This document shows, piece by piece, positions 6,196 through 61,926 of a DNA stretch of 64,000 nucleotides. The stretch spans positions 62,001-126,000 of IMG/VR virus record IMGVR_UViG_3300031344_000002; one strand, 5' to 3'. A program made the position numbers and the translations under genes. Each line of letters begins with the position of its first letter. Position 1 is the stretch's first letter. Below the pieces are notes generated by a model. The model made no database searches and was not told the origin of the DNA. It saw only the letters and a program-made list of their open reading frames with translations.

Positions 6196-6205
6196 AGTAT
6201 TTATA
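6196..6205 (+). promoter_or_regulatory. Putative phage late promoter motif AGTATTTATA
   Basis: 23 nt upstream of ATG 6229; one of about 22 oriented copies. Confidence 0.65.
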
Positions 6206-6228
6206 AAATATTATAAAAAATTATAAAT

Positions 6229-7134
6229 ATGATAATAGATAATAAAATAAAAGAAAATGATAGTTACGTTGTGCTTGAAATTTCTGGGGGGCATGGTAAG
6301 AATATTCAAGCAACAGCAGTAATTAGAGCAATAAAAAAACAATATCCTACTAGGAAAATTATTGTGGTGGGAAGCTGGGATGCCCCGTTTTTTAATAATC
6401 CCAATATATTTAGATTTTATTTACAGGGTCAAATGCAATATTTCAAGGATGACTATCTTAAAGATGATACGATTATAATGAAACATGACCCCTATAATGA
6501 AACTAATCATATTTTAAGAAAAGAACATTTAACTGAAACTTGGTGCAAAATGTTTGGTATTCCTTATGATGGTTATAAACCAGAACTTTATATAAATCCA
6601 AGAGAACTTGAAATAGCAAAAGATAAAATAAAACCAGATTCTCGTCCCATAATGCTTCTTCAAACGCATGGTGGCGGGGGTCAGACGTATTCAAAAAAGT
6701 CTTGGTATAGAGATATGCCAGTGGAGATAGCTCAAAAATTGGTAAATTATTTCAATAAATCATATAGAATTCTTCACATAAAAAATCCTGACCAACCAAA
6801 TTTACAAGGAGTAGAACCTCTTAATTTACCTTTAAGAGAATTATATGCTGTGTTTCCCTTAAGTACAAAAAGATTATTTATTGATAGTTTTGCAGCACAT
6901 GCTGCAGCAGCATTAGGTTTACAAAGTACTGTTTGTTGGATTGGTAACAGTCCTACTGTTTTCGGATATCCTGAAAATATTAATATATTACCAAATGCTA
7001 ATATTGTTAATCAATTTAATAAATATACGTACTTAATTGATGATATTAGTGGGTTTGTACAATCTTTTCCTTATGATACAGTTAATGTTTTTGATATAAA
7101 TCAAATAATTGAAGCAGTAAATAAACAAAAGTAA
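6229..7134 (+). CDS. Glycosyltransferase, GT9/heptosyltransferase-like
   Basis: GGHGKNIQATAVIRAIKKQYP N-terminus and FIDSFAAHAAAALG...VCW C-terminal motif. Confidence 0.65.
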   Translation: MIIDNKIKENDSYVVLEISGGHGKNIQATAVIRAIKKQYPTRKIIVVGSWDAPFFNNPNIFRFYLQGQMQYFKDDYLKDDTIIMKHDPYNETNHILRKEHLTETWCKMFGIPYDGYKPELYINPRELEIAKDKIKPDSRPIMLLQTHGGGGQTYSKKSWYRDMPVEIAQKLVNYFNKSYRILHIKNPDQPNLQGVEPLNLPLRELYAVFPLSTKRLFIDSFAAHAAAALGLQSTVCWIGNSPTVFGYPENINILPNANIVNQFNKYTYLIDDISGFVQSFPYDTVNVFDINQIIEAVNKQK

Positions 7135-7163
7135 AATATTATAATCTTTATTGTAACAATACA

Positions 7164-7172
7164 AGTATTTAT
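7164..7172 (+). promoter_or_regulatory. Putative late promoter motif AGTATTTAT
   Basis: 17 nt upstream of ATG 7190. Confidence 0.6.
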
Positions 7173-7189
7173 TATAAAAATAAAACATT

Positions 7190-7432
7190 ATGTTATCAGA
7201 AGATGTATATAATTTACTACAAATCAATCAATCAAAATTTATTGATGTAGTATCTCCAACAATGATTTTTATAGGTATTACAAATAATTTAAAAGATACT
7301 GCTGCTAAGAATTGGAGTATTCAAAAAATTTCACAAGTTGGTACAGTTTGGCGTTTTGAATATCCTTATGGTGACCAAAATTTTGCATATGTTTGGGATA
7401 ATAGAAACAATGGTACATATACTTATCAATAA
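7190..7432 (+). CDS. Small virion-associated hypothetical protein
   Basis: 80 aa with W.IQKI...YP.G...F...WDNR, a pattern seen in small phage structural proteins; follows a late motif. Confidence 0.5.
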   Translation: MLSEDVYNLLQINQSKFIDVVSPTMIFIGITNNLKDTAAKNWSIQKISQVGTVWRFEYPYGDQNFAYVWDNRNNGTYTYQ

Positions 7433-7464
7433 TATGTTAAATAAATTATAAAAAAGATTAATTA

Positions 7465-7827
7465 ATGGCAACATTTGCAATAGATTTATTATCAGGAACG
7501 GCATTATTACTTACAGGTAATTTTGGCAGTAGTGGAAGTACTTCTTCATCATGGGGTTCAATAATTGGTGTATTAAGTGGTCAAACTGATTTACAAAACA
7601 CATTAAATACTAAATTAAATATTTCTGCATTTAATAATTATACTGGTACTACAATTCCTAACACATTAAATACTAAATTAAATATTTCTGCATTTAATAA
7701 TTATACTGGTACTACAATTCCTAATACTTATCATAATAAAACAGAAATTGATAATTATACAGGTAGTTCGGTTGTTCTTTTAACACAAAGAATGGCAAAA
7801 TTATTTGCATATAATAATTTCGATTAA
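7465..7827 (+). CDS. Small fibre-related structural protein with an internal 21-aa duplication
   Basis: WGSIIGVLSGQTDLQ and two copies of NTLNTKLNISAFNNYTGTTIP. Confidence 0.55.
   Translation: MATFAIDLLSGTALLLTGNFGSSGSTSSSWGSIIGVLSGQTDLQNTLNTKLNISAFNNYTGTTIPNTLNTKLNISAFNNYTGTTIPNTYHNKTEIDNYTGSSVVLLTQRMAKLFAYNNFD
7597..7722 (+). repeat. Perfect 63-nt tandem duplication
   Basis: Units 7597-7659 and 7660-7722 are identical. Confidence 0.9.
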
Positions 7828-7893
7828 ATTTCGACACCTAATTGCTGTTAACTAATTTATTATCTGTTGAACCAAATAAGGTTTTTATTATAC

Positions 7894-8868
7894 TTATATT
7901 TGTATATTTGTAAAATCGTAAATTTCATTTGAAATTTGACATGTTATATTATATGTATTAGCACCATTAATATTATTTCCTAAGCCAGTCCAGTTTTTAC
8001 CGTCATAAGAATAAGCCAAATTATTAGTTCCAGTACCAGCAGCAACGAACATCTTACCATTATAAATAACACTTTGTCCACGTGTTGAAAATATTGTATT
8101 TCCTAAACCATGCCAAATAATTCCGTCTGTCGACCAAGCTATATAATTAGTACCTATTCCTACTGCTACAGATATGCCATTACCTCTAACGCCTCCAAAT
8201 CCCCTTGTTGTAAAAATGGTGTTATTAATACCAGTCCAATTAATACCATCATAGGAATAAGCTATTGAATATGTGCCAGCATCCCCAAAAGCAATAAATT
8301 TAGAACCGTCCCAAAAACCTCCCCTAGCAATCGTAAATATCGAATTACCACAGCCATTCCAAACTATACCGTCATCACTCCATGCAATAGAGTTAGTACC
8401 GCCACCAAATGCAACGAATCTATTACCATTATTACAAATATTTATGCCATAACTTGAAAAAATATTTGTACCTAATTGATGCCAATTAATTCCATTTTTT
8501 GAATACGCTAAAGTAGATAAAAGTTGACCCGTTGTATAACCGACTGCAACATATATGTTTTTTTTATATGATATGGCATAAATAATATTGTTAATGCTAC
8601 CATTTTGACTACCAAAGTTTAAGTTTATTTTATGCCATTTTTTTAAATCATAACTATATGACAAACAGGAATTTTGTACAGTACTAATAGTAGTATTACG
8701 ACCAGTTTGAAAAGCAATTTTATCAAATATATAAAAACCTAGTGAAATTTGTTCATATTTTAAAGGGTATTGATTATAATTAATACCATCATAACTAATA
8801 CTTGGGGGAATATTAGCAACGCTATTAGGAACAATTACAATATTTTTATTAATTGTTTTCACTTTCAA
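7894..8868 (-). CDS. Beta-propeller-like protein with Asp-box (S-x-D-G-x-x-W) repeats; start uncertain
   Basis: Repeats YSYDLKKW, YSKNGINW, WSDDGIVW, YSYDGINW, WSTDGIIW, YSYDGKNW. The annotated start is TTG, preceded in frame by ATG-TAA. Confidence 0.6.
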   Translation of the reverse strand: MKVKTINKNIVIVPNSVANIPPSISYDGINYNQYPLKYEQISLGFYIFDKIAFQTGRNTTISTVQNSCLSYSYDLKKWHKINLNFGSQNGSINNIIYAISYKKNIYVAVGYTTGQLLSTLAYSKNGINWHQLGTNIFSSYGINICNNGNRFVAFGGGTNSIAWSDDGIVWNGCGNSIFTIARGGFWDGSKFIAFGDAGTYSIAYSYDGINWTGINNTIFTTRGFGGVRGNGISVAVGIGTNYIAWSTDGIIWHGLGNTIFSTRGQSVIYNGKMFVAAGTGTNNLAYSYDGKNWTGLGNNINGANTYNITCQISNEIYDFTNIQI

Positions 8869-8898
8869 TAGTTACATTTTGTTGGTTATGTTTATTAT

Positions 8899-9315
8899 TT
8901 AATAGTTTGCACCTTCTACAATAACATCTTGTTGGTCTTGAACTCCAGCATAAACACTTTGAGCAACGCCTAATATTACACCACTTGGAAGAAATAAACC
9001 ACCAGTTATAATAATATTTTTAGCACCAATTGCTGTGGTACTACGAGTTGCCGTAGCTATAGCTATTTCATTATCTAATTTCCAAGTACTACCACCATCA
9101 CTAGATAAAAATATTTTACCTGTCATTGCAGAACTAGCTCCTGCACTTAATTGTGAATTTATATAAGTAATTTTATCTACTCTTGTACCATTTGTAGCAC
9201 CCGTTACAACTTTTGTAATAGAACCACTACCATTAGATGCAGTATTACCAGTTACTAAACGAGTCATACCTAAAATAAATGTGTTGGAAAAGATTGGGTT
9301 TAAATTTGCACTCAT
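8899..9315 (-). CDS. Small beta-rich tail fibre-associated protein
   Basis: 138 aa, G/T/S/A-rich, with an Asp-box LSSDGGSTW; has its own late motif on the minus strand. Confidence 0.5.
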   Translation of the reverse strand: MSANLNPIFSNTFILGMTRLVTGNTASNGSGSITKVVTGATNGTRVDKITYINSQLSAGASSAMTGKIFLSSDGGSTWKLDNEIAIATATRSTTAIGAKNIIITGGLFLPSGVILGVAQSVYAGVQDQQDVIVEGANY

Positions 9316-9350: not shown

Positions 9351-9359
9351 ATAAATACT
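9351..9359 (-). promoter_or_regulatory. Putative late promoter motif AGTATTTAT on the minus strand
   Basis: ataaatact on +; points toward the only minus-strand genes. Confidence 0.6.
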
Positions 9360-9401: not shown

Positions 9402-9411
9402 AGTATTTATA
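9402..9411 (+). promoter_or_regulatory. Putative late promoter motif AGTATTTATA
   Basis: 17 nt upstream of ATG 9429; divergent from the 9351 copy. Confidence 0.65.
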
Positions 9412-9428: not shown

Positions 9429-9719
9429 ATGGTAAGTAAAATTTTAGAAATATTTTCACACAATGGTGAATTAAGTTCAAAACGAATAGGTGGATTTATG
9501 TTAATAATATCAGGAATAGTTTTATGTTTTACATATTATGAAAAAACATTATGTCTGGGTGTTATATCAATTGGTGCAGGACTTTTGGGATTTACAAGTG
9601 TTGAAAAAATATTTGAAGATAAGGATAATTCAAATAATGTTTGCGCTAAAGAAAATACAGATAATAATTCAAATAATATTACCACTAAAGAAGATACTGG
9701 TAATGACGTTGCCAAATAA
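9429..9719 (+). CDS. Small two-TM membrane protein, holin-like
   Basis: The start was moved to ATG 9429 because the TTG at 9390 lies upstream of the promoter motif. SSKR is followed by two hydrophobic segments and a charged tail. Confidence 0.45.
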   Translation: MVSKILEIFSHNGELSSKRIGGFMLIISGIVLCFTYYEKTLCLGVISIGAGLLGFTSVEKIFEDKDNSNNVCAKENTDNNSNNITTKEDTGNDVAK

Positions 9720-9724: not shown

Positions 9725-10138
9725 ATGGATTACTCGACATTCAATATTAACAACTTTTTTATTAAAAAAGATAGCACATTTCCTGAATTAAAATATCCAT
9801 TGTTGCAACATACATTAGAACAATATGGTATAACTTCAGATATGCTCGAAAATGTTGCAGTTACAGTATCTATGATTGATGAAAATGGATTGTATCGTAT
9901 TGCAAATGTTCCAGCAAATCTTGTTATTAATGATAATAGACTAGATTTTCCTGCTGAAGAAAAATATACATTAACATATAAATTTAAGCTAAGAGATACA
10001 AGAAAAACAGGTAATTACAAATTGGAACTTACTGTAGATTTTTTAGGAAATGAATTTTGTGGAAAGATAAAATTTCCAGTTAATGGTTATATAAATGTTA
10101 TAATATCTGATTCAATTACTAAGACCACAGTTGTTTAA
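9725..10138 (+). CDS. Ig-like baseplate upper protein (BppU N-terminal-like)
   Basis: FFIKKDST.P.L...LTYKF...DT...G.Y..E..V.F...KFP..GYI.V.I pattern. Confidence 0.5.
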   Translation: MDYSTFNINNFFIKKDSTFPELKYPLLQHTLEQYGITSDMLENVAVTVSMIDENGLYRIANVPANLVINDNRLDFPAEEKYTLTYKFKLRDTRKTGNYKLELTVDFLGNEFCGKIKFPVNGYINVIISDSITKTTVV

Positions 10139-10201: not shown

Positions 10202-10232
10202 ATTGACATTTTTGTTTTTTTGATTATCTTTG
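10202..10232 (+). promoter_or_regulatory. Bacteroidota-type host sigma70 promoter
   Basis: aTTG at 10202-10205, 19-nt spacer, TATCTTTG (TAnnTTTG) at 10225-10232. Confidence 0.65.
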
Positions 10233-16129: not shown

Positions 16130-16139
16130 AGTATTTATA
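16130..16139 (+). promoter_or_regulatory. Putative late promoter motif AGTATTTATA
   Basis: 14 nt upstream of ATG 16154. Confidence 0.65.
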
Positions 16140-16153: not shown

Positions 16154-16792
16154 ATGATATTAAAAAAGATAGATTTACTCGAAATAATCGATTCGAATGG
16201 TGAGTTAATTGGTAAAAATGATACGCCTACAAATGGCAGTGATTTAGAAAGTCAAGCTAATAATACTACCGATTATAATGCCAAAATTGGCACACAACCC
16301 TTTAGATATGATATGTTGGGTCGTTTTGGATTTTCCAATTTAAGTTTTACTGAGGGAAAAGAAAATCAAGAACAGAAAGAATTATTAAAAGATTTGGCAG
16401 TACTTGTTCATGAAAAATATATGAAGGATTTACAATATTTTTATAAAAACCCCAATAAATTAAAAAGTGATTATAGAAAAGTTGTTGGTGATAAATTTCA
16501 TTCAGAGGAATGTCAAAAAGCAGATATGGAATGGGCAAAAAAAATAATTAAAATAATGGAACTATATTTCGAAAATGTATTTAAAGAACCAATTGACGAA
16601 ATTAATTCAATTACGGAAAGTAAGGTAGAGGAAGATAAACTCGTCAATAAAAAATCTGAAGATGAAATATCAAAAAAATCTGAAAACCAAGAAATTAAAA
16701 ACAAAAAACTCCAAAAAGTTGCTGGTTTAATCAATAAACTCGATAAAAAAGATATTGATAAACTAATAAATTTATTGGAAAGAAGTAGATAA
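16154..16792 (+). CDS. Hypothetical (putative virion-internal) protein
   Basis: 212-aa charged ORF behind a late motif; contains LLE and ITE motifs. Confidence 0.5.
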   Translation: MILKKIDLLEIIDSNGELIGKNDTPTNGSDLESQANNTTDYNAKIGTQPFRYDMLGRFGFSNLSFTEGKENQEQKELLKDLAVLVHEKYMKDLQYFYKNPNKLKSDYRKVVGDKFHSEECQKADMEWAKKIIKIMELYFENVFKEPIDEINSITESKVEEDKLVNKKSEDEISKKSENQEIKNKKLQKVAGLINKLDKKDIDKLINLLERSR

Positions 16793-17583
16793 TGAATAAT
16801 ATGGCGAATAAAGAATTATATGATAAAACCTATCCTGTGCCTCAAAACATACTTAAAAGTATTGAGGTGGCGAAAGCATCTACTTCAGATAGTAATGGTC
16901 TAAAAAGGGCAAATTTTATACTTAAAAACGGTGTTTTAACATATCAGGCATTAAAAAGATTAAAGAATTTTTTTGATTATTTTAATCCACAAACTCAAAA
17001 TAAAACACAATATGCACTTGCTGGTGGTGATTTAATGAAACGATTTATTGAAACATCGTTAGCGCAAGATAGGGCAGGTGTTGTACGTAGTAAGAAAATT
17101 AAACAGGATATAACCACCAATCCTAATTCGGAATTAAAACCTTATCAAAGACCAAGGTTAAACGAAGAAAGGAAAGAATTAAAAAAAAACGCTGTTGCAG
17201 TAATTGTCAATAATGATAATAAAATTTTATTACTTAAAAGAGCAGATGATAGTAAAATTTGGATGCCAAATAAATGGTCATTGGTTGGTGGTGAAATGAA
17301 AAAAGATGAAACACCACAACAAGCCATTGAGAGAGAAATACTTGAAGAAACTAAATTAGAAATTAAAAAATTTATAAAATCACTTAGTATTCAAAGAAAA
17401 ACTGATAGTATTGAACACGTATTTGCTTGTAGATATACTGGTGAAGAAACAGATGTTAAATTAAATGATGAAAATACAAAGTATGGCTGGTATGATGTTT
17501 CTGAAATGAAATATTTAGATACTGTACCACATTTAATAGAATATATTACACTTGTATTTAAATCATATGAAGATGAAAAATAA
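16792..17583 (+). CDS. Nudix hydrolase with N-terminal helical domain
   Basis: Nudix box GGEMKKDETPQQAIEREILEETKLE; an LNE motif sits at the domain junction. Confidence 0.85.
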   Translation: MNNMANKELYDKTYPVPQNILKSIEVAKASTSDSNGLKRANFILKNGVLTYQALKRLKNFFDYFNPQTQNKTQYALAGGDLMKRFIETSLAQDRAGVVRSKKIKQDITTNPNSELKPYQRPRLNEERKELKKNAVAVIVNNDNKILLLKRADDSKIWMPNKWSLVGGEMKKDETPQQAIEREILEETKLEIKKFIKSLSIQRKTDSIEHVFACRYTGEETDVKLNDENTKYGWYDVSEMKYLDTVPHLIEYITLVFKSYEDEK

Positions 17584-17594: not shown

Positions 17595-17604
17595 ACTATT
17601 TATA
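17595..17604 (+). promoter_or_regulatory. Putative late promoter motif ACTATTTATA
   Basis: Upstream of ATG 17639. Confidence 0.55.
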
Positions 17605-18882: not shown

Positions 18883-18892
18883 AGTATTTATA
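18883..18892 (+). promoter_or_regulatory. Putative late promoter motif AGTATTTATA
   Basis: 22 nt upstream of ATG 18915. Confidence 0.65.
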
Positions 18893-19627: not shown

Positions 19628-19637
19628 TGTATTTATA
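19628..19637 (+). promoter_or_regulatory. Putative late promoter motif TGTATTTATA
   Basis: 19 nt upstream of ATG 19657. Confidence 0.6.
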
Positions 19638-26666: not shown

Positions 26667-26676
26667 AGTATTTATA
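26667..26676 (+). promoter_or_regulatory. Putative late promoter motif AGTATTTATA
   Basis: 12 nt upstream of GTG 26689. Confidence 0.55.
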
Positions 26677-29056: not shown

Positions 29057-29066
29057 TGTATTTATA
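29057..29066 (+). promoter_or_regulatory. Putative late promoter motif TGTATTTATA
   Basis: 19 nt upstream of ATG 29086. Confidence 0.6.
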
Positions 29067-30344: not shown

Positions 30345-30370
30345 AAAGCCAACATTTTGTTGGCTTTTAT
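30345..30370 (+). terminator. Intrinsic terminator
   Basis: aaagccaac-atttt-gttggcttt followed by a T-run. Confidence 0.75.
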
Positions 30371-34401: not shown

Positions 34402-34430
34402 AAATCCCGGCAAGTTTGTCGGGATTTTTT
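34402..34430 (+). terminator. Intrinsic terminator
   Basis: aaatcccggca-agtt-tgtcgggattt followed by a T-run. Confidence 0.8.
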
Positions 34431-34438: not shown

Positions 34439-34448
34439 AGTATTTATA
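34439..34448 (+). promoter_or_regulatory. Putative late promoter motif AGTATTTATA
   Basis: Directly after the terminator and 15 nt before the gp25-like ATG. Confidence 0.7.
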
Positions 34449-39013: not shown

Positions 39014-39023
39014 TGTATTTATA
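39014..39023 (+). promoter_or_regulatory. Putative late promoter motif TGTATTTATA
   Basis: Upstream of GTG 39066. Confidence 0.5.
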
Positions 39024-39977: not shown

Positions 39978-40037
39978 TTATTTTCGTGTATTTATTTCAA
40001 AAATCCCAATCTAAAATAAAAACTTATTTGGTTCGGA

Positions 40038-40047
40038 ACTATTTATA
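40038..40047 (+). promoter_or_regulatory. Putative late promoter motif ACTATTTATA
   Basis: 16 nt upstream of GTG 40064. Confidence 0.55.
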
Positions 40048-43738: not shown

Positions 43739-43750
43739 ATTATGAAAATA

Positions 43751-43760
43751 AGTATTTATA
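43751..43760 (+). promoter_or_regulatory. Putative late promoter motif AGTATTTATA inside the 36-nt in-frame spacer
   Basis: 14 nt upstream of ATG 43775. Confidence 0.6.
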
Positions 43761-43774
43761 AAAAATAATATAAA

Positions 43775-44757: not shown

Positions 44758-44767
44758 AGTATTTATA
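44758..44767 (+). promoter_or_regulatory. Putative late promoter motif AGTATTTATA
   Basis: 19 nt upstream of ATG 44787. Confidence 0.65.
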
Positions 44768-46884: not shown

Positions 46885-46893
46885 AGTATTTAT
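46885..46893 (+). promoter_or_regulatory. Putative late promoter motif AGTATTTAT
   Basis: 8 nt upstream of ATG 46902; an alternative ATG lies at 46926. Confidence 0.5.
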
Positions 46894-47764: not shown

Positions 47765-48069
47765 AATATATATATTTAATACAATCATTAGAAAATAGTC
47801 ATTATAAAATTGGAGTATCTAAGCATCCTAATAAACGTCTAAAAGAATTGCAAACGGGAAACTCTTCTGAATTAAAATTAATTAATACATATAAATCAGA
47901 ATTTGCACATCAAATTGAAAGAACATTACAACGAAGATATTCACATTTAAAAAAAGAAGGTGAATGGTTCGATATGTCAATAATTAATGAAGTTATATTC
48001 AATAATGAATGTAGGAAAATTGAAGAAAATTTAATTTTTTTGAAAAAAAGTGGGAATGTATTTATATAA
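47761..48069 (+). CDS. GIY-YIG/T5orf172-like protein
   Basis: YIYLI...YKIGVS..P.KRL.ELQTGN...E..L...Y...K.EGEWF. Confidence 0.8.
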   Translation: MKYIYLIQSLENSHYKIGVSKHPNKRLKELQTGNSSELKLINTYKSEFAHQIERTLQRRYSHLKKEGEWFDMSIINEVIFNNECRKIEENLIFLKKSGNVFI

Positions 48070-48125: not shown

Positions 48126-48157
48126 CTTGCATTATCTATAAATTTGTATTAAGTTTG
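48126..48157 (+). promoter_or_regulatory. Bacteroidota-type host sigma70 promoter
   Basis: cTTG at 48126-48129, 20-nt spacer, TAAGTTTG at 48150-48157. Confidence 0.6.
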
Positions 48158-50907: not shown

Positions 50908-50947
50908 AATTTGCCATAAATCCTTTGAATTATGGCAAATTTTTTTT
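50908..50947 (+). terminator. Perfect 12-bp inverted repeat plus T-run, overlapping the primase promoter
   Basis: aatttgccataa (50908-50919) and ttatggcaaatt (50930-50941). Confidence 0.55.
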
Positions 50948-50954
50948 ATATTTG
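50924..50954 (+). promoter_or_regulatory. Bacteroidota-type host sigma70 promoter
   Basis: TTTG at 50924-50927, 19-nt spacer, TATATTTG at 50947-50954. Confidence 0.7.
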
Positions 50955-50959
50955 CATCT

Positions 50960-52024
50960 ATGAATAATTATCGTGGTCAAGAATTTTATAGTATAATTCA
51001 AAATATATTCGGTGACGTTCATGGAACTGGACCACAATTTCAGGTAGAATGTCCTATCTGTCAAGATAATAAATTTAATCTTGAAATAAATACGGCAAAA
51101 GGTAAGGGCATATTTAAATGTTGGTCGTGCCAGTCACCACCCTTCAGTGGTTCACTTTCTAAACTAATTTATTTATACGGGTCCAAATCAGACTATGCAC
51201 TCTATAAGTCATATGCAAGTATTTATAGTAATTATTCATATGAAAATAATAATGATGAACAAGAATATGTACAGGTTAAACTTCCAAGTGAAATGATATT
51301 ATTTTCTAAAATTGAAGAAGGAAATCCTGAACATTTTGAAGCATATAATTATCTTATTAATGAAAGAAAAATAAGTCGAGAACTTTTTTTAAAATATCGG
51401 TTTGGTTTTTGTACCACTGGAAAATATGCCAAGAGAATAATAGTCCCGTCTTATGATATGACTGGTGATGTGAATTATTTTATTTCACGTAGTTATGATT
51501 CAAAAGAAAAAAGAAAATATTTAAATCCTGTTGCAGATAAAAATAAAATCATTTTTAATGAAGGTTTTATTAATTGGGACTCAACCGTTTTTTTATGTGA
51601 AGGTGTTTTTGATGCATTTTCATTACCCAATGCAATTCCATTATTAGGAAAAACATTATCAATAACACTTTTTAATAAACTAAATGAATTAAAACCAAAT
51701 ATAATTGTTTTATTAGACCCTGACGCAATAAAAAATGCAATAAATTTATATCAAACATTACATACTATTTATGTTGGTTGTGAAGATAGAATTAGAATTG
51801 TCGAATTACCAATAAAAGAAGATATCGATAGACTTAGAAAAGATTATGGAATTGAAAAAGTAATTGAAACGCTGTATACTGCAAGAAAACTAAATAATAA
51901 TGATTGTTTTATAAATAAATTAACTAAACCTTATGATAATAGCAGTAGAGCAGGAAAAGGAAGATATGATTCTTATTCAAAATACTTTGAATGGAAATCC
52001 ACAAGCGCAAGAAAAACTATATAA
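50960..52024 (+). CDS. DNA primase (DnaG-type, Zn finger plus TOPRIM)
   Basis: CPIC...KCWSC, EGVFDA and LLDPDA. Confidence 0.88.
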   Translation: MNNYRGQEFYSIIQNIFGDVHGTGPQFQVECPICQDNKFNLEINTAKGKGIFKCWSCQSPPFSGSLSKLIYLYGSKSDYALYKSYASIYSNYSYENNNDEQEYVQVKLPSEMILFSKIEEGNPEHFEAYNYLINERKISRELFLKYRFGFCTTGKYAKRIIVPSYDMTGDVNYFISRSYDSKEKRKYLNPVADKNKIIFNEGFINWDSTVFLCEGVFDAFSLPNAIPLLGKTLSITLFNKLNELKPNIIVLLDPDAIKNAINLYQTLHTIYVGCEDRIRIVELPIKEDIDRLRKDYGIEKVIETLYTARKLNNNDCFINKLTKPYDNSSRAGKGRYDSYSKYFEWKSTSARKTI

Positions 52025-52544
52025 TAAATATAAAAAACTTATTATGAATTTCTTAAAAGCTAAATATTCACAAAGTGATATTGATGATGTATCAGAAATA
52101 ATGATTAAAATTTTTATAAATTTAAAATTGTTCGATAATACAAAATCAAAATTTAGCTCATGGGTATTTAGCATTGCTAAAAATTATATGATAGATAAAT
52201 GGCGTAGCAATGCCACATTTAGTGCTGAAAATATTAATTATATAACAACAAATGATTGTATATCTACATCAAATAATAGTAATTATATTACATCAACAAA
52301 TATAAATAATCTCGAATTTATTACAAATTATAACATGGAATTTGAGAATAATAACTCAATAAATTATATTTCAAAACAATTATCACCTGAAGAATTTACT
52401 TTACTTGATATGAAATATGTTCAGGGATATGATTATTGTGAAATTGGAAAAGAATTTAATGTTTCAAGTTCTACAATTAGCAATAGAGTCAATTATATTA
52501 AAACTAAACTCAAAAAAAACAATCCAGAGATAATTTATGATTAA
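51933..52544 (+). CDS. Phage RNA polymerase sigma factor (ECF/sigma70-like); start uncertain (51933 or 51966)
   Basis: LYNKYKKLI, FSSWVFSIAKNYMIDKWR (region 2) and region 4 HTH GYDYCEIGKEFNVSSSTISNRV. Confidence 0.8.
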   Translation: MIIAVEQEKEDMILIQNTLNGNPQAQEKLYNKYKKLIMNFLKAKYSQSDIDDVSEIMIKIFINLKLFDNTKSKFSSWVFSIAKNYMIDKWRSNATFSAENINYITTNDCISTSNNSNYITSTNINNLEFITNYNMEFENNNSINYISKQLSPEEFTLLDMKYVQGYDYCEIGKEFNVSSSTISNRVNYIKTKLKKNNPEIIYD

Positions 52545-52548: not shown

Positions 52549-52558
52549 AGTATTTATA
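52549..52558 (+). promoter_or_regulatory. Putative late promoter motif AGTATTTATA
   Basis: 16 nt upstream of ATG 52575. Confidence 0.65.
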
Positions 52559-52574: not shown

Positions 52575-53939
52575 ATGAAAAGAGGTATTTTTGAGTATGT
52601 TAATTTACAAAAGCAAAATCTTACCAGTAAAGAAGGTAAACCATATGTGAGATATATTGTAGTTTCTGATATAAATCTTGAAACAAAAAAAGTAAAAGAA
52701 AAATTAGCATCACTTGGTTTTCGATGGAATGGCAAAGAATGGTGGATATTTGGAAGTAATTTAACGCAAGAAATTCTTAATGCTTTAAAATCAATCAATG
52801 CTGAATTAGAAACACAAGGTGGTCAAACAGGTAATCTTCAGGATTTTCTTACACAATTAGAAAATCTAAAATCGGAAGTACAAAAATCAAATATGCCATC
52901 TAAAACAAAATCTGAACTCGAAACAAAAATTGAACAATATGTTGAAGATATTGCAAATGCAACTGATGAAAAAGCTGCTTCTGCTGAATTTCAAAAATTT
53001 TTAGACTTTTCACATAAATTTCATAATTATAGTTTTAGCAATATTATGTTAATCTATTTACAGGATTCAAAAGCATCTAAAGTTGCTGGTGAAGGTACTT
53101 GGAATAGAAAATTTAAAAGGCAAGTTATTGATAAAACAAAAGCAATTACTATTTGGTGTGGTAATAAATTTTATAAAAAATCTGATGGTAAATTAGCACA
53201 ATATACATTAGACCAACAAAAAAAAGATAGTGAATACATTAAAAAAGTTGAAGCTGGCGAAGCACCAACGAATAAAAATGAATTAGATGCAATTAAATCA
53301 AGAAAACAAATAGTTCATATAAAATACGACCCATGTATTGTTTATGATATTACAAATACATCTGGTGAACCAGTTCCAGAAGAACTAAATTGGAAAGGTG
53401 CTTATGATGACCGTGCAGATGCAAAAGCATTATTTATAATTTCTAAAAAAAGTCTTGAAAATATGGGAATTAAAGTAACTCAAAATCCTTCAAGTGGTGG
53501 TGAGGGTGGTTGGAGTAGTAAAGGTCATATAAATGTTAGTCAAGATGCAACAGGTAGTGGTGCAGCATCAACTATTTTTCATGAATGGGCACATGATTTA
53601 TTACATCATGAAGGTGGAAAATTTTATGATAAAGCAATGGATTATTTTCAAAAGAAAGGTGATTTAAATTATTCTGAAGTAAAACAAATAAGAGAAATTC
53701 AAGCAGAAACAATATCTGCAGTTCTTTGTAGATATTATGGATTACCTTCAGAGCATCATCCCACATATATGGCATTATGGCAAGCACAAGGTAAATTAAG
53801 CAGTAAACAATTAATAAAAGAAAATATTTCAACTGTTACTGATGTAAGCAATTTTATTATACATCAAGTTGATATTAATAGGGATGAATTTGATAAAGCA
53901 AGAGTGGAAATGCAACAACAAGTGCAACCAGAACAATAA
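52575..53939 (+). CDS. ArdC-like anti-restriction protein (ssDNA-binding N domain plus zincin-like metallopeptidase)
   Basis: FHNYSFSNIMLIYLQ...VAG..TW; HEWAH...H...E.QAE..SA.LC.YYGL. Confidence 0.75.
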   Translation: MKRGIFEYVNLQKQNLTSKEGKPYVRYIVVSDINLETKKVKEKLASLGFRWNGKEWWIFGSNLTQEILNALKSINAELETQGGQTGNLQDFLTQLENLKSEVQKSNMPSKTKSELETKIEQYVEDIANATDEKAASAEFQKFLDFSHKFHNYSFSNIMLIYLQDSKASKVAGEGTWNRKFKRQVIDKTKAITIWCGNKFYKKSDGKLAQYTLDQQKKDSEYIKKVEAGEAPTNKNELDAIKSRKQIVHIKYDPCIVYDITNTSGEPVPEELNWKGAYDDRADAKALFIISKKSLENMGIKVTQNPSSGGEGGWSSKGHINVSQDATGSGAASTIFHEWAHDLLHHEGGKFYDKAMDYFQKKGDLNYSEVKQIREIQAETISAVLCRYYGLPSEHHPTYMALWQAQGKLSSKQLIKENISTVTDVSNFIIHQVDINRDEFDKARVEMQQQVQPEQ

Positions 53940-53992: not shown

Positions 53993-54024
53993 CTTGCATT
54001 ATACATAGGGTTTCAATATATTTG
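53993..54024 (+). promoter_or_regulatory. Bacteroidota-type host sigma70 promoter
   Basis: cTTG at 53993-53996, 20-nt spacer, TATATTTG at 54017-54024. Confidence 0.65.
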
Positions 54025-57402: not shown

Positions 57403-57411
57403 ACTATTTAT
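57403..57411 (+). promoter_or_regulatory. Putative late promoter motif ACTATTTAT
   Basis: 15 nt upstream of ATG 57427. Confidence 0.45.
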
Positions 57412-57426: not shown

Positions 57427-58578
57427 ATGGATTTAAAAAAATACGATGAATTAAGAAAAAAGATTAACACTAAAGACTTTGAAGGTAATAATAAAGGTCT
57501 TGATAAATGGTTATATTTATTTTCTTTTATTGGAAATGCTGGTTCAATATTCTTTTCATACTTTCTTGTATATCCGGGATTATTAAAAGCAATTACAATT
57601 AATTTAATTGGTGGTATATGGGCAAGTATTTTTGCATTTACTTTTACAATAATATTTCTTGTTATTTTCGAAGTAATTAAACGATATTTAATTAAAAGTT
57701 TTTCAACAGATTTTGTTTCAAATAAAAAGAAAATTAAAGCAAGTATTGTTGGTTGGTTAATAATATCAGTCTCAATTATTTTATTAAGTTTTTATTTATC
57801 AATAATTGGTTCAAAAAATTTAGCATCAACAAGTACATATAAAGATAATGTTATTGAAAATAAAACAACAAATATAACTGATAGTTTATCAATATTATAT
57901 GAAAAGAAAAAGAAAACATATGAGGATGACAATACAATTTTAAGAATGATTAATAATGATTTACGTCAAAAATTAACAGAAACTCCTGTTACATATATAT
58001 CAATTAGAAATCAATATCAGGCAAATATTGATAAAAATGTAAAAATTATTGAAAATAATCAAAAAGAGGTGGATAAAATTGAAGATAAATTATCTCAAAA
58101 TGTTGTTGAATTAAAATCAAATCTTAGTGAAGTAAAAAATGTTAATAAGACAGAAGATGTACAAAATATTATTTTATTTGTGATTATTGCGTGTTTCTGC
58201 GAAATCATCATATTTTCAGGAGTATATTTTAGAGAATGGTTTGAGTACAACCTCTTTATTATCAATCAACAAAAATTTGAAAAAATATATACGAAAAAAG
58301 ATAGATATCGTTCATTATTGGCATTTATTTATAATGATGGTAAATCAACAACAGGTGATAAAGTAATAAGTGGTTTGGAATTAAAAGAATTGGTTGCTGA
58401 GAAAACTAGCATCCAAAATTCAAATAAATTTTTGGATGAATTTTTACATGATATGGATAGACTTGGAGTGTTCAATACTGTTGGCAAAAGAAGATTTATT
58501 GCTGTAACATATTATGAAGCAATGAATGTAATTGAAAGTTTTGATGATACATTGAGAATATTAGAAAATATGAAATAA
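57427..58578 (+). CDS. Multi-TM membrane protein with coiled-coil domain
   Basis: Three N-terminal hydrophobic segments, a coiled coil, then a further TM segment. Confidence 0.6.
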   Translation: MDLKKYDELRKKINTKDFEGNNKGLDKWLYLFSFIGNAGSIFFSYFLVYPGLLKAITINLIGGIWASIFAFTFTIIFLVIFEVIKRYLIKSFSTDFVSNKKKIKASIVGWLIISVSIILLSFYLSIIGSKNLASTSTYKDNVIENKTTNITDSLSILYEKKKKTYEDDNTILRMINNDLRQKLTETPVTYISIRNQYQANIDKNVKIIENNQKEVDKIEDKLSQNVVELKSNLSEVKNVNKTEDVQNIILFVIIACFCEIIIFSGVYFREWFEYNLFIINQQKFEKIYTKKDRYRSLLAFIYNDGKSTTGDKVISGLELKELVAEKTSIQNSNKFLDEFLHDMDRLGVFNTVGKRRFIAVTYYEAMNVIESFDDTLRILENMK

Positions 58579-59423: not shown

Positions 59424-59424
59424 A

Positions 59425-60036: not shown

Positions 60037-60161
60037 AAAAAATTATAAGAAAAATCGAAGATTGGTTGTGGTTAAATGTTGGTTTTCATCATTACATGCA
60101 TAAATTAGAGAAATATGTTAAAAAGAATTCAATTGTTTTAATATATACTGATGTTGATTAA
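60033..60161 (+). CDS. Possible small ORF (42 aa, not in the track)
   Basis: ATGA overlap with the previous stop; MKKIIRKIEDWLWL... Confidence 0.3.
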   Translation: MKKIIRKIEDWLWLNVGFHHYMHKLEKYVKKNSIVLIYTDVD

Positions 60162-60170
60162 GTATTTATA
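60161..60170 (+). promoter_or_regulatory. Putative late promoter motif AGTATTTATA
   Basis: 11 nt upstream of ATG 60182. Confidence 0.65.
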
Positions 60171-60181: not shown

Positions 60182-60685
60182 ATGGATAATAAAAATATAA
60201 ACAACCAAAGCACACCAAATCAAATACGTATTTTTATGAAAAGAATACGTGAAGGAAAATATGAAGCAAGTGAATCATCAGAAGAAATGAAGAAGGATTT
60301 ATCAATTCAGGATATGCTTAAAATTACTCGTAAAATTAATGAAGATGTTAATACTGGAGAAGATAAAACAGCACAGAATAAAAAAACTGTTTACGACCAA
60401 AGTCGTGAAGAAGAAAAATTTACTGATTTTTTTAGAGATATGAATGTCAGCATTAAATTTATTGATTTAGAAATTTATGATAATCTAGTTTTTTGGGGTG
60501 GTACTGTCGATGGTGTAATTCAATTTGTTTACAAAGTAACTCCTGATGAAAAAACATCTGGTGTTGAATTTAATTATTTGGAAGATTTTTCGCCTGATAA
60601 TCCAGAAAATGATGAAATTGTGGGAAGAATAGAATCTTACTACGATAATTTTTATAAGTATTGGAGAAATAATATGTTACAATAA
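60182..60685 (+). CDS. Hypothetical (putative virion) protein
   Basis: 167 aa; an INE motif follows the N-terminal segment. Confidence 0.5.
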   Translation: MDNKNINNQSTPNQIRIFMKRIREGKYEASESSEEMKKDLSIQDMLKITRKINEDVNTGEDKTAQNKKTVYDQSREEEKFTDFFRDMNVSIKFIDLEIYDNLVFWGGTVDGVIQFVYKVTPDEKTSGVEFNYLEDFSPDNPENDEIVGRIESYYDNFYKYWRNNMLQ

Positions 60686-60734: not shown

Positions 60735-60770
60735 AAAAACGCAAGCCAAGATGCTCTGCGTTTTTTGCTT
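60735..60770 (+). terminator. Intrinsic terminator-like hairpin
   Basis: aaaaacgca-agc...gct-c-tgcgttttt. Confidence 0.6.
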
Positions 60771-60778
60771 TTATAAAA

Positions 60779-60787
60779 AGTATTTAT
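60779..60787 (+). promoter_or_regulatory. Putative late promoter motif AGTATTTAT
   Basis: 17 nt upstream of ATG 60805. Confidence 0.6.
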
Positions 60788-60804
60788 TATAAAATATTAT
60801 AAAA

Positions 60805-61587
60805 ATGAAAAAAATTTTAGCTTTTTTAAAACAAAAGAATAATGCAATAATTACTGCGGTAATTATTATCATATTAATTCTTTCAGCAATTGTTTATTTT
60901 CAACATAAAAAAATTGCAAACCTTAATGATAAATATCAAAGTGAAGTTAAATTAAAAAATGCTTTAGTTGATACTGCCAAAGTTTATAAAAATAAAGAAA
61001 ATGAATGGGTTACAGAAAAACTAACATTACAAGGAAGTCTTAAACTTATTAATGATGTTAATAACCATCTCACTGCATCAGAACAAGAATTAACAAAAAG
61101 AGTTAAAGAATCGGAAAAAAATAATTCAGTTATTACTGCAGCACTTATTCAAACTAAAGTCGAATTGGATTCATTAAAAAGTGGAAAAGTTAGTATTAAT
61201 GATAAAGATAGTAGTATTGCATTTGCAGATTCAACAAAAAATATTAAATATAATATTGAAATTTTACATGTTAGACCAATAAGTTTAACAATATTACCAA
61301 TAATGAAATTCAATAAATTTGAATTACCCAATAAGCAATATATTCAATTTTTTTGGAGTGATAAGAAAAAAGATTATCCCATTTCATTTAGCGTAAGTAA
61401 TTCTAATGATTATTTTAAAACAGTAAATATTGATAGCTATGCTATTCCACAATTACAAAAAGATGTTATAAATCCAAGTGCTTGGCAAAAATTTACTACT
61501 TGGATAAAAAAAAGTGGTAGTTTTATAATAACTGTTGGAGTTTCTGGTGCTGCCGGAGCAGGATTATATGCTATTTTGCATAAATAA
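60805..61587 (+). CDS. Membrane-anchored coiled-coil protein, possible spanin-like lysis protein
   Basis: N-terminal TM segment, coiled coil, C-terminal hydrophobic segment; late motif. Confidence 0.45.
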   Translation: MKKILAFLKQKNNAIITAVIIIILILSAIVYFQHKKIANLNDKYQSEVKLKNALVDTAKVYKNKENEWVTEKLTLQGSLKLINDVNNHLTASEQELTKRVKESEKNNSVITAALIQTKVELDSLKSGKVSINDKDSSIAFADSTKNIKYNIEILHVRPISLTILPIMKFNKFELPNKQYIQFFWSDKKKDYPISFSVSNSNDYFKTVNIDSYAIPQLQKDVINPSAWQKFTTWIKKSGSFIITVGVSGAAGAGLYAILHK

Positions 61588-61607
61588 TATAATTTTTAAA
61601 TTAATGT

Positions 61608-61647
61608 AAAGAACGTGTGTTATTATAATATGCGTTCTTTTTATTTT
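61608..61647 (+). terminator. Intrinsic terminator
   Basis: aaagaacgtgtgtta / taatatgcgttcttt form a 15-bp stem with G-U pairs, followed by a T-run. Confidence 0.7.
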
Positions 61648-61659
61648 TAAAATAGATTA

Positions 61660-61669
61660 AGTATTTATA
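61660..61669 (+). promoter_or_regulatory. Putative late promoter motif AGTATTTATA
   Basis: 13 nt upstream of ATG 61683. Confidence 0.65.
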
Positions 61670-61682
61670 ATAAAATTATTAT

Positions 61683-61889
61683 ATGGACAATAATGATGTT
61701 AAGACAATCGTCAAGGATGAAATTAATAAATTCGTCAATGATGCTTTAGATAGGGAAGTTAAGAAAATACTTAAAAAATCTGGAAGTCAAACAAGAAATG
61801 AAATGATTAATACTATTGGAGATGCCATAGAAATGGTTTATAAAGTATTATGGCAAAAGCGTGATTTCTGGCGTACAGGGATTAAATAA
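61683..61889 (+). CDS. Small hypothetical virion-type protein
   Basis: 68 aa with VKTIVKDEI and LWQKRDFW. Confidence 0.5.
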   Translation: MDNNDVKTIVKDEINKFVNDALDREVKKILKKSGSQTRNEMINTIGDAIEMVYKVLWQKRDFWRTGIK

Positions 61890-61916
61890 TTGATTATAAA
61901 CAATTGATAATATCTA

Positions 61917-61926
61917 AGTATTTATA
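61917..61926 (+). promoter_or_regulatory. Putative late promoter motif AGTATTTATA
   Basis: 17 nt upstream of ATG 61944. Confidence 0.65.

What the first reader, a model, noticed from the sequence alone, without database searches (positions are those of the whole stretch)
6196..61926. About 22 oriented copies of (A/T)(G/C)TATTTAT(A) just upstream of structural and effector genes: a phage late promoter that is the reverse complement of the T4 late box
Copies at 6196, 7164, 9351(-), 9402, 16130, 17595, 18883, 19628, 26667, 29057, 34439, 39014, 40038, 43751, 44758, 46885, 52549, 57403, 60161, 60779, 61660 and 61917 lie 8-42 nt (mostly 11-23) before a start codon. Several directly follow terminators. 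The motif flips strand in front of the only minus-strand genes and is absent in front of the helicase, primase and SbcCD genes. TATTTATA is the reverse complement of the T4 late consensus TATAAATA, but here it reads on the sense strand, so it would be a different recognition code. Caveat: the AT-rich background inflates chance matches.
Basis: partly seen in the sequence, partly recalled or inferred. Interest (0 to 1): 0.6.

Follow-up and report, generated by a model that had tools for sequence, protein, structure and literature searches.

The report
Variant T4-type late promoter, jumbo phage
The repeated word GTATTTAT(A) is a real, strictly conserved one-box promoter that heads the virion-gene operons of a large clade of uncultivated T4-like jumbo phages with Bacteroidota-style gene signals. 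It is most likely read by a phage-encoded relative of the T4 late sigma factor gp55, so it is a new variant of a known kind of switch rather than a new recognition code.

Summary
All 22 listed copies exist, and the window holds 23 intergenic copies against 1.6 expected from intergenic composition. Across the 218-kb contig, GTATTTAT is the top de novo 8-mer upstream of genes: 36 sense, 2 antisense, shuffle mean 2.2. It occurs only at operon heads and never before 144 tightly packed genes. It is invariant before orthologous genes in about 78 relatives (39-100% protein identity, 22-39% GC).

It has no -35 partner. The consensus is a-[G>C]TATTTAT-a-N2-AAA, and no single-mismatch variant other than C in place of the leading G (CTATTTAT) is enriched.

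It heads baseplate, sheath and terminase genes and the capsid operon. Helicase, SbcD, primase and SbcC instead carry Bacteroidota sigma-A promoters (TTG-N19-21-TAnnTTTG). A third, ECF-type class (GTAAC-N16-CGTA) lies outside the window.

On the same strand TATTTATA matches the T4 late box TATAAATA at 6 of 8 positions. The clade also encodes gp55-family sigmas. The "reverse complement, different code" reading is therefore unnecessary, and specificity rests on the 5' G.

Which sigma reads the motif is inferred, not shown. The gp55-like proteins are favoured, and the ECF-like sigma in the window (51933-52544) is the main rival. No start-site data exist. Verdict: a real promoter, a new variant of a known kind, of moderate interest.

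The parts
6196..6204 (+). class A box AGTATTTAT, 24 nt before ORF 6229-7134
   Evidence: kept before the G005 ortholog
7164..7172 (+). class A box, 17 nt before ORF 7190-7432
9351..9359 (-). class A box on the minus strand, 35 nt before ORF 8899-9315(-). One half of a divergent promoter pair
9402..9410 (+). class A box, 18 nt before ORF 9429-9719 (then 9725-10138). The other half of the divergent pair
16130..16138 (+). class A box, 15 nt before ORF 16154-16792 and the Nudix gene 16792-17583
17595..17603 (+). class A box, C variant (ACTATTTAT), 35 nt before ORF 17639-17926
18883..18891 (+). class A box, 23 nt before ORF 18915-19598
19628..19636 (+). class A box, 20 nt before the 2317-aa ORF 19657-26610
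26667..26675 (+). class A box before ORF 26689 (GTG) or 26773 (ATG) to 27558
29057..29065 (+). class A box, 20 nt before ORF 29086-29940
34402..34427 (+). intrinsic-terminator-like hairpin (11 bp stem plus T run) directly before the next class A box
34439..34447 (+). class A box, 16 nt before the baseplate operon (gp25-like 34464-34862, gp6-like 35620-37470, through to 39007)
   Evidence: kept in G005 and G001
39014..39022 (+). class A box, 43 nt before ORF 39066-39977
40038..40046 (+). class A box, C variant, 17 nt before the 1224-aa ORF 40064-43738
43751..43759 (+). class A box, 15 nt before ORF 43775-44731
44758..44766 (+). class A box, 20 nt before the conserved 442-aa ORF 44787-46115. Invariant in about 78 relatives
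46885..46893 (+). class A box, 8 nt before ORF 46902-47135
48057..48065 (+). extra copy (TGTATTTAT) at the 3' end of ORF 47761-48069, 126 nt before SbcD. A possible distal promoter
   Evidence: a copy also lies upstream of SbcD in G005
52549..52557 (+). class A box, 17 nt before ORF 52575-53939, directly after the sigma-I gene
57403..57411 (+). class A box, C variant, 15 nt before ORF 57427-58578
60161..60169 (+). class A box, 12 nt before ORF 60182-60685
60779..60787 (+). class A box, 17 nt before ORF 60805-61587. Follows a hairpin plus T run at about 60736-60766
61608..61640 (+). terminator-like hairpin directly before the next class A box
61660..61668 (+). class A box, 14 nt before ORF 61683-61889
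61917..61925 (+). class A box, 18 nt before ORF 61944 onward (907 aa, runs past the window end)
51933..52544 (+). phage ECF-like sigma factor 'sigma-I' (Sigma70_r2 plus r4, 203 aa), overlapping the 3' end of the primase gene. The rival candidate reader of the motif
   Evidence: orthologs sit next to primase in all six relatives examined
10203..10232 (+). contrast class B: Bacteroidota sigma-A-type promoter (TTG-N19-TATCTTTG), 21 nt before the helicase gene
   Evidence: kept in G005
48127..48157 (+). contrast class B promoter before SbcD (48192)
50925..50954 (+). contrast class B promoter ending 5 nt before the primase ATG (50960), near-leaderless. It also drives sigma-I
   Evidence: kept in G005 and G001
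53994..54024 (+). contrast class B promoter before SbcC (54056)

Best explanation
GTATTTAT(A) is the late-type promoter of a T4-like jumbo phage whose host uses Bacteroidota-style signals.

It is a single -10-like box, a-[G>C]-TATTTAT-a, with no -35 element. An A run lies 3-5 nt downstream, and transcription probably starts there. That would give very short (about 7-12 nt) leaders without a Shine-Dalgarno sequence.

The proposed mechanism has three steps.
1. Early in infection, host RNA polymerase with host sigma-A reads the TTG/TAnnTTTG promoters of the replication genes.
2. Later, host core polymerase carrying a phage gp55-family sigma reads GTATTTAT boxes. These head about 45 operons in this contig, including baseplate, sheath-like and other virion genes. 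In the complete relative G005 they head the terminase gene and the capsid operon.
3. The candidate sigmas are a conserved 254-297-aa form (G000:24088-24969, minus strand) and/or a 105-aa form (G000:149333-149650). Both lie outside the window.

In T4 register the box reads T-13 A-12 T-11 T-10 T-9 A-8 T-7 A-6. It keeps the two adenines that gp55 buries in deep pockets and differs at -10 and -9.

Shown: the motif, its strictness, its orientation, its operon-head placement, its conservation, its separation from the two other promoter classes, and the presence of gp55-family genes.

Inferred: that it is a promoter, that it acts late, where transcription starts, and which sigma reads it.
For: Enrichment and strand bias.

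Strict 8-mer: only GTATTTAT and, weakly, CTATTTAT are strand-biased among all single-mismatch variants.

No -35 element, and a downstream AAA, in three genomes of 26-40% GC.

Operon-head placement: 0 of 144 genes with an upstream gap under 15 nt carry the motif, against 46 of 185 with larger gaps. There is also a divergent pair at 9351/9402, and hairpins precede three copies.

Footprint:
- The box is invariant before the 442-aa ortholog in about 78 loci.
- In 85 relatives' loci it appears 299 times sense and 10 times antisense.
- 19 of 20 orthologous promoters are kept in G005, and about 9 of 16 in G001.
- The 10-mer is enriched in five distant genomes.

Gene content downstream:
- gp25- and gp6-like baseplate genes.
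- A sheath-like gene.
- In G005, the terminase gene and the operon holding two gp23-type capsid genes.

Contrast: helicase, SbcD, primase and SbcC carry TTG-N19-21-TAnnTTTG. This is the Bacteroidetes sigma-A consensus (PMC6847099).

Evidence for a gp55 family in this clade:
- The family profile of the 105-aa ORF hits T4 gp55 (7d7c_F) at E = 1.2e-10.
- 41 of 66 family members hit phrog_234, 'late sigma transcription factor'.
- The ESM Atlas places the ORF among small viral sigma region-2 proteins.
- The longer paralog aligns to that family at hhalign probability 95.8%, E = 7e-9.
- The longer paralog is present and syntenic in all seven genomes, with 47% identity between G005 and G001.

T4 late promoters are likewise one 8-bp box at -13 to -6 with no -35, and they vary among T4-like phages, for example CTAAATA in Aeh1 (PMC1524935; PMC7892883).

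No RNA polymerase beta-prime domain was found in five genomes.
Against: - No transcription start sites or timing data exist. The only RNA run holding related sequence is kept as assembled contigs and shows neither.
- The link between sigma and motif is circumstantial. Sigma-I is equally universal and sits in an early-looking operon.
- The gp55 similarity of the long form is transitive: direct PHROG and PDB searches on it found nothing.
- The own copy of the long form carries a roughly 40-aa insertion inside the conserved motif.
- No gp45 clamp domain was found by Pfam, and gp33 was not looked for.
- The two capsid genes of G005 have no box of their own. They depend on a CTATTTAT box two genes upstream.
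- Some class A genes are not obviously virion genes: Nudix, an HNH/HTH protein, and small ORFs before the helicase.
- The exact T4 consensus is not met (6 of 8 positions).
Confidence: 0.6

Rival explanations
1. Same promoter, different reader. The ECF-like sigma-I encoded in the window (51933-52544) is made from the host-type primase promoter. It then directs host core polymerase to GTATTTAT boxes, acting as a -10-only ECF-like sigma. By my own recollection, phage phiEco32 gp36 works this way.
For: - Sigma-I has Sigma70_r2 and r4 domains and is closest to SigW/SigE among solved structures.
- It lies next to primase in all seven genomes and under a class B promoter. That is the expected position for a regulator of later genes.
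- Its region 4 is atypical compared with the canonical ECF region 4 of sigma-II. This could fit loss of -35 reading.
- In G001 it was the best direct hit of the gp55-family profile.
Against: - The genomes also hold two subtypes of textbook ECF promoters. One is GTAACA...TCGTATAA, scattered through the genome. The other is GTAACC...CGT(A/T), clustered around sigma-II. This gives two ECF-like sigmas for two ECF-type promoter subtypes, which leaves class A for the gp55 family.
- Class A has no AAC/CGT signature.
- Sigma-I diverges to about 30% identity while the motif stays invariant. The long gp55-like protein is better conserved.
Confidence: 0.22
2. The motif is read by a host factor, either an alternative host sigma or a host activator, and not by a phage-encoded one.
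For: - The host is unknown, so its sigma repertoire could not be examined.
- Bacteroidota carry many alternative sigmas (own knowledge).
Against: - The motif differs from the Bacteroidetes sigma-A consensus, which the phage uses separately.
- The phages carry three or four sigma-like genes of their own.
- The motif is invariant across phages of 22-40% GC, which probably infect different hosts.
Confidence: 0.06
3. The motif acts in the RNA rather than the DNA. It would be a translation-initiation enhancer or an endonuclease processing site placed at a fixed distance from start codons in an organism without Shine-Dalgarno pairing.
For: - The distance to the ATG is sharply peaked at 14-17 nt.
- Starts lack Shine-Dalgarno sequences: 11 of 329 have an SD-like 4-mer.
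Against: - The motif is absent from all 144 tightly packed genes and from most genes with 15-39-nt gaps, and those genes must still be translated.
- Functional-looking copies lie 43-109 nt from the ATG.
- Copies sit right after terminators and in divergent pairs, as promoters do.
- Replication genes do without it.
Confidence: 0.06
4. It is a chance product of the AT-rich intergenic background.
For: The window is about 26% GC. The bare core TATTTAT is as common in antisense as in sense.
Against: - 23 intergenic copies are observed against 1.6 expected.
- Sense against antisense is 36 to 2 and 299 to 10 in relatives.
- The motif is conserved in genomes of 40% GC.
Confidence: 0.01

Closest known systems
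Bacteriophage T4 late promoters (TATAAATA at -13 to -6) read by gp55 with gp33 and the gp45 clamp (PMC2988020, PMC7892883, PMC1524935)
   Same: - One 8-bp AT-rich -10-like box with no -35 element.
- Heads virion and packaging genes.
- The phage is T4-like in its core genes: gp23-type capsid, gp25/gp6 baseplate, family B polymerase, gp46/47-like SbcCD.
- The phage encodes gp55-family proteins.
- 6 of 8 box positions are identical on the same strand, including the adenines at -12 and -8 that gp55 buries.
   Different: - The centre of the box is TT instead of AA.
- An upstream G (or C) is essential and carries the strand specificity.
- The gp55 relatives are either much shorter (105 aa) or longer (254-297 aa, with a C-terminal helical extension) than T4 gp55 (185 aa).
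- No gp45 domain was detected.
- The host-type promoters are of Bacteroidota type, not sigma-70 type.
- The phage also carries two ECF-like sigmas and an ECF-type promoter class that T4 lacks.
Variant late boxes of other T4-like phages, such as Aeromonas phage Aeh1 CTAAATA and the weakly conserved -13 position in RB49, KVP40 and S-PM2 (PMC1524935)
   Same: This is a precedent that the late box drifts within the T4 superfamily while keeping its one-box architecture and its place before late-gene orthologs.
   Different: Those variants keep the AAATA half. Here the AA to TT change lies in the middle of the box, and a new conserved base is added 5' of it.
ECF sigma promoters, such as B. subtilis SigW TGAAAC-N16-CGTA (PMC5758882)
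   Same: - The clade contains exactly this kind of promoter (GTAAC-N16-CGTA, with a T tract after AAC).
- It also contains ECF-like sigmas, one of which is preceded by such a promoter as if autoregulated.
   Different: That is a separate class (C) found outside the window. GTATTTAT has neither the AAC -35 nor the CGT -10.
Sigma cascades of large lytic phages, such as Bacillus phage SPO1: host sigma-A, then gp28, then gp33/34 (own knowledge; PMC13401047 abstract)
   Same: The host primary sigma serves early genes, and phage sigmas with distinct promoter consensus serve later classes.
   Different: - SPO1 promoters are two-box.
- Here at least three phage-specific promoter types coexist with three or four sigma-like genes in a T4-like genome.
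Bacteroidetes sigma-A promoter, -33 TTTG / -7 TAnnTTTG (PMC6847099)
   Same: Used by this phage before helicase, SbcD, primase and SbcC. Together with starts lacking Shine-Dalgarno sequences, it points to a Bacteroidota host.
   Different: GTATTTAT is not this element. The two classes are mutually exclusive on genes in the window.

Membership tests
T4-type (gp55-dependent) late promoter | Single -10-like box of about 8 bp with no conserved -35 element | tested here: met
   Information content is flat from -50 to -2 relative to the box in the own contig (51 sites) and in the own contig, G005 and G001 (37, 84 and 42 sites).
T4-type (gp55-dependent) late promoter | Consensus TATAAATA | tested here: not met
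   The consensus is [G>C]TATTTAT(A), which matches at 6 of 8 positions in the same register. TATAAATA itself shows no sense enrichment upstream of genes: 11 sense against 32 for its complement, and that complement is the class A box itself.
T4-type (gp55-dependent) late promoter | The phage encodes a gp55-family sigma | tested here: met
   The family profile of the 105-aa ORF hits T4 gp55 (7d7c_F) at E = 1.2e-10, and 41 of 66 members hit phrog_234. A longer paralog aligns at hhalign probability 95.8% and is present in all seven genomes. Both genes lie outside the window.
T4-type (gp55-dependent) late promoter | Placed before virion and packaging (late) genes and not before replication genes | tested here: met
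   Present before the baseplate operon, the sheath-like gene, the terminase and the capsid operon. Absent from the proximal promoter regions of helicase, primase and SbcC, which carry class B. SbcD has class B plus a distal copy. The functions of many class A genes are unknown.
T4-type (gp55-dependent) late promoter | Activation through the gp33 co-activator and the gp45 sliding clamp | tested here: inconclusive
   Pfam DNA_PPF (the gp45 N-domain) was not found in G000, G005 or G001. Divergent clamps could be missed. gp33 was not searched for.
T4-type (gp55-dependent) late promoter | Transcription starts about 6 nt downstream of the box, late in infection | not testable with these tools
   Only assembled contigs of one peat metatranscriptome hold related sequence. 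They give no read ends and no timing.
ECF sigma promoter | -35 AAC motif and -10 CGT motif about 16 nt apart | tested here: not met
   Neither motif is present around GTATTTAT. Such promoters exist as a separate class elsewhere in the genome.
Bacteroidota sigma-A promoter | -7 TAnnTTTG with -33 TTG/TTTG | tested here: not met
   Among class A sites in the window only 6196 also has a TAnnTTTG upstream. The four strict TTG-N-TAnnTTTG sites lie before different genes.
Sigma-70 promoter (TTGACA-N17-TATAAT, or extended -10 TGnTATAAT) | Matches to the two hexamers in excess of chance | tested here: not met
   Sigma-70-type matches are at or below shuffle expectation in all four scans: 130 against 152, 161 against 179, 176 against 171, and 27 against 28.

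The most novel reading that the evidence does not exclude
A T4-like jumbo phage clade runs a four-class transcription programme on host core polymerase.
- Host sigma-A promoters.
- Two subtypes of ECF-type promoters, served by two phage ECF-like sigmas, one of them autoregulated.
- A re-coded gp55-type late box (G-TATTTAT-A), read by an enlarged gp55 relative.

The C-terminal helical extension of that gp55 relative may replace the gp33/gp45 clamp coupling of T4. This would be the first gp55-type system described for Bacteroidota phages. It would also be a natural experiment in how a region-2-only sigma changes its -10 code, through the -9 pocket residue H95 changing to Tyr or Phe together with A to T at -9.
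Probability: 0.3. Interest if true: 0.7.

Novelty: new variant of a known kind. Interest (0 to 1): 0.5.

Why it matters
The motif gives a ready operon map and a temporal-class predictor for a large clade of 200-370-kb phages. The clade has at least about 80 contigs in IMG/VR and no cultured member.

The motif, the host-type promoters and the starts without Shine-Dalgarno sequences together point to Bacteroidota hosts.

It also offers a testable case of how the minimal late sigma of T4-like phages re-codes its one-box promoter. In addition, it exposes an unusually rich sigma repertoire (gp55-like plus ECF-like) in one genome.

Practically, the 8-mer and the two other promoter classes could serve as orthogonal parts for expression in Bacteroidota, if the cognate sigmas are confirmed.

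Tried and rejected
- **Nucleotide and protein searches against cultured phages** found no relative for the 2317-aa gene, the 442-aa gene or sigma-I. The polymerase has only distant hits.
- **Function of the conserved 442-aa protein.** Pfam, PHROGs, a PDB profile search, a mediocre AlphaFold model (pLDDT 63) and Foldseek against PDB and BFVD gave nothing usable. It is not the capsid protein.
- **RNA evidence.** One peat metatranscriptome holds small contigs of related strains inside 40064-44731. It gives no ends and no strand.
- **Phage RNA polymerase as reader.** No Rpb1_2 domain was found in five genomes. A very divergent phiKZ-type enzyme cannot be excluded.
- **gp55 leads that failed.** Direct BLASTP of the 105-aa ORF against T4 gp55 gave nothing. 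A two-sequence profile also gave nothing. Only the deep family profile worked.
- **Long gp55-like protein.** PHROGs and a single-sequence PDB search found nothing. The PDB profile search gave only noise. The fold model was poor (pLDDT 61) and Foldseek was uninformative.
- **G004's third sigma as the ortholog of the 105-aa ORF:** not supported.
- **A fourth promoter class** among unassigned upstream regions: none found.
- **gp45 clamp by Pfam:** none found.
- **Literature search for the word GTATTTAT as a promoter:** nothing relevant.
- **Promoter heading the operons that hold the two gp55-like genes:** not identifiable.

Full report
**Setting**

The window is bases 62001-126000 of a 218,381-bp IMG/VR virus contig. 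The contig is 26.3% GC and CheckV rates it 66% complete.

It is a T4-like jumbo myovirus.
- It has a family B DNA polymerase, helicase, primase, SbcCD (gp46/47-like), and gp25- and gp6-like baseplate proteins.
- A closely related complete genome is G005 (349 kb, collinear, 75-94% nucleotide identity). It adds two gp23-type capsid genes and a terminase, in the part that the own contig lacks.
- No cultured phage is close.
- Relatives are numerous in IMG/VR, up to 366 kb, some with terminal repeats.
- Start codons lack Shine-Dalgarno sequences: 11 of 329 have an SD-like 4-mer, no more than the internal controls. They show A at -3 (68%) and an A-rich stretch at -14 to -10. This is the Bacteroidetes pattern (PMC6847099).

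**The observation**

All 22 listed copies are real.
- The whole-window count is 29, against 16.5 +/- 4 in shuffles. This understates the signal.
- 23 copies lie in intergenic DNA, where composition predicts 1.6 (p = 5e-28).
- Over the whole contig, GTATTTAT is the most enriched 8-mer in the 60 nt upstream of genes. It occurs 36 times in sense and 2 in antisense. Shuffled upstream regions give 2.2 on average and at most 8 in 2000 trials. It tops all 168 permutations of its own letters.

The bare core TATTTAT is equally frequent in both orientations (56 and 58), so the strand-specific signal comes from the 5' G.

Apart from C in place of the leading G (CTATTTAT, weakly enriched), no single-mismatch variant is enriched. 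The element is therefore an unusually strict 8-mer.

The extended consensus is a-[G>C]-TATTTAT-a-N2-AAA. There is nothing conserved upstream to -50. This holds in the own contig and also in G005 and in G001, which is 40.5% GC.

**Why it is a promoter rather than a per-gene signal**
- The box never precedes any of the 144 genes that follow their neighbour by fewer than 15 nt. It precedes 46 of the 185 genes with larger gaps, so it marks operon heads.
- It forms a divergent pair at 9351(-)/9402(+), and a tandem pair at 39987/40038.
- It sits directly after terminator-like hairpins at 34402-34427, about 60736-60766 and 61608-61640.
- Copies 43-109 nt from the start codon exist, so the spacing to the ATG is preferred, not obligatory.

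**Conservation**
- Before the ortholog of the 442-aa gene (44787-46115), the 8-mer is invariant in essentially all of about 78 loci. The protein there has diverged to 39-44% identity and GC ranges from 22 to 39%, and the flanks have diverged.
- In 85 non-redundant relatives' loci (1.47 Mb), the word occurs 299 times in sense and 10 in antisense upstream of genes. Its distance to the ATG peaks at 14-17 nt.
- Gene by gene, 19 of 20 window class A genes with an ortholog in G005 keep the box at the same distance. About 9 of 16 do so in the distant G001.
- The 10-mer AGTATTTATA is enriched in five further genomes: 14-35 copies against 0-7 for the reversed control.

**Two other promoter classes give the contrast**

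- helicase, at 10203-10232;
- SbcD, at 48127-48157;
- primase, at 50925-50954;
- SbcC, at 53994-54024.

This is the Bacteroidetes sigma-A consensus (PMC6847099). These sites are kept in G005, and the primase site also in G001. E. coli-type sigma-70 matches are not above chance.

A third class lies outside the window: ttGTAAC(A/C)tttt-N-CGTAta, with 16 nt between GTAAC and CGTA. It precedes 16 genes in the own contig and 38 in G005. This is the textbook ECF pattern, with an AAC -35 followed by a T tract and a CGTA -10 as for SigW (PMC5758882). It comes in two subtypes, both also present in G001:
- a scattered GTAACA...TCGTATAA type;
- a GTAACC...CGT(A/T) type with a TAAACCAA leader, clustered on about 20 small genes.

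No fourth class was found among the unassigned upstream regions.

Class A dominates the large-gene, virion-rich part of the genome. Class C dominates the small-gene regions.

**Who reads class A**

No RNA polymerase beta-prime domain is present in five genomes, so a sigma on host core polymerase is the natural reader. The clade has several sigma-like genes.

(i) *Sigma-I.* This lies in the window at 51933-52544. It is ECF-like (regions 2 and 4, closest solved relatives SigW, SigE and SigL). It overlaps the end of the primase gene, lies under its host-type promoter, and is present in all genomes.

(ii) *Sigma-II.* This has a canonical ECF region 4. It lies inside the GTAACC cluster and is itself preceded by such a promoter in three genomes, as autoregulated ECF sigmas are. 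It falls in the part missing from the own contig.

(iii) *A 105-aa ORF, G000:149333-149650.*
- It first appeared as a weak phrog_234 hit.
- An exhaustive profile search gave 78 related clusters.
- Their alignment hits T4 gp55 (PDB 7d7c_F) at E = 1.2e-10.
- 41 of 66 members hit phrog_234, 'late sigma transcription factor'.
- The ESM Atlas places the ORF among small viral sigma region-2 proteins.

(iv) *A 254-297-aa paralog, own copy at G000:24088-24969 on the minus strand.*
- The same family profile found it.
- It is syntenic in all seven genomes and 47% identical between G005 and G001.
- It aligns to the gp55-like family at hhalign probability 95.8% over the region-2 core.

T4 late promoters are a single box, TATAAATA, at -13 to -6 with no -35 element (PMC1524935, PMC7892883). 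On the same strand TATTTATA differs from it only at -10 and -9.

gp55 flips the adenines at -12, -9 and -8 into pockets (Y97; N13/H95; T99). Here A-12 and A-8 are kept. The family keeps the residues aligned with F86 and Y97. The residue aligned with H95, in the -9 pocket, is Tyr or Phe. This last point is suggestive only.

The most economical assignment is therefore:
- host sigma-A reads class B;
- the two ECF-like sigmas read the two ECF-type subtypes;
- the gp55-like sigma(s) read class A.

**What remains open**
- No start sites or timing are available. The single RNA run that holds related sequence is kept only as contigs.
- The long gp55-like protein is linked to gp55 only transitively, and its model was too poor for fold comparison.
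- gp45 was not detected, and gp33 was not sought.
- The capsid genes of G005 depend on a CTATTTAT box two genes upstream.
- Many class A genes have no known function, so 'structural and effector genes' is only partly verified.
- The promoters that drive the gp55-like genes themselves could not be identified.

**Verdict**

The finding is real and functional-looking. The 'late promoter' reading is reasonable. The 'reverse complement, different code' reading should be replaced by 'same-strand variant of the T4-type one-box late promoter, with an added essential 5' G/C'.

It is a new variant of a known kind in an uncultivated Bacteroidota-type jumbo phage clade. The unusually rich sigma and promoter repertoire is the more interesting by-product.

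Noticed in passing
window 10203-10232, 48127-48157, 50925-50954, 53994-54024: Canonical Bacteroidota sigma-A promoters (TTG-N19-21-TAnnTTTG) lie before helicase, SbcD, primase and SbcC. Together with starts that lack Shine-Dalgarno sequences and have A at -3, they point to a Bacteroidota host.
   Followed up: yes
window 50947-50962; also G000:134610 and 140283 (minus strand): The -7 box TATATTTG ends only 4-6 nt before the ATG. Transcription would then start at or next to the start codon, giving leaderless or near-leaderless mRNAs. The arrangement before primase is kept in G005 and G001.
   Followed up: partly
G000:8329-216496 (16 sites, none in the window); G005 289-305 kb; G001 9.5-20 kb: A third promoter class of textbook ECF type (GTAAC-N16-CGTA) occurs in two subtypes. 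One subtype is clustered on about 20 small genes around a second ECF-like sigma gene that looks autoregulated. That cluster has a conserved TAAACCAA leader.
   Followed up: partly
window 51933-52544: An ECF-like sigma factor gene overlaps the last 92 nt of the primase gene. It is conserved next to primase in all relatives examined.
   Followed up: yes
G000:24088-24969(-) compared with G005:175942-176706: The long gp55-like gene exists in two forms. One has a roughly 40-aa insertion exactly inside the conserved region-2 motif (own contig, G006, G001). The other lacks it (G002-G005). The nature of the insertion is unknown.
   Followed up: no
window 4461-5887, inside ORF 3644-6091: About 36 tandem copies of a 39-nt (13-residue) unit. 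This is probably a repetitive fibre or beta-helix protein. The preceding 946-aa ORF has tail-fibre or decoration-like Ig domains.
   Followed up: no
window 19657-26610: A 2317-aa ORF under a class A box carries a poly(A) polymerase / CCA-adding nucleotidyltransferase head and RNA-binding domain at residues about 1480-1850. The rest is unassigned.
   Followed up: no
window 30345-30367 and 30458-31846: A perfect bidirectional terminator hairpin is followed by a 137-nt gap and a 462-aa glycosyltransferase-like gene. None of the three promoter classes is present.
   Followed up: no
window 39887-40001: In two DNA runs that hold close strains, this intergenic stretch, which contains the extra box at 39987, is replaced by 118 other letters. 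The proximal box at 40038 is kept.
   Followed up: no
G005:210702-214097: Two adjacent 561-aa gp23-type major capsid paralogs lie in one operon.
   Followed up: no
window 7597-7724: A perfect 63-nt direct duplication lies inside ORF 7465-7827.
   Followed up: no
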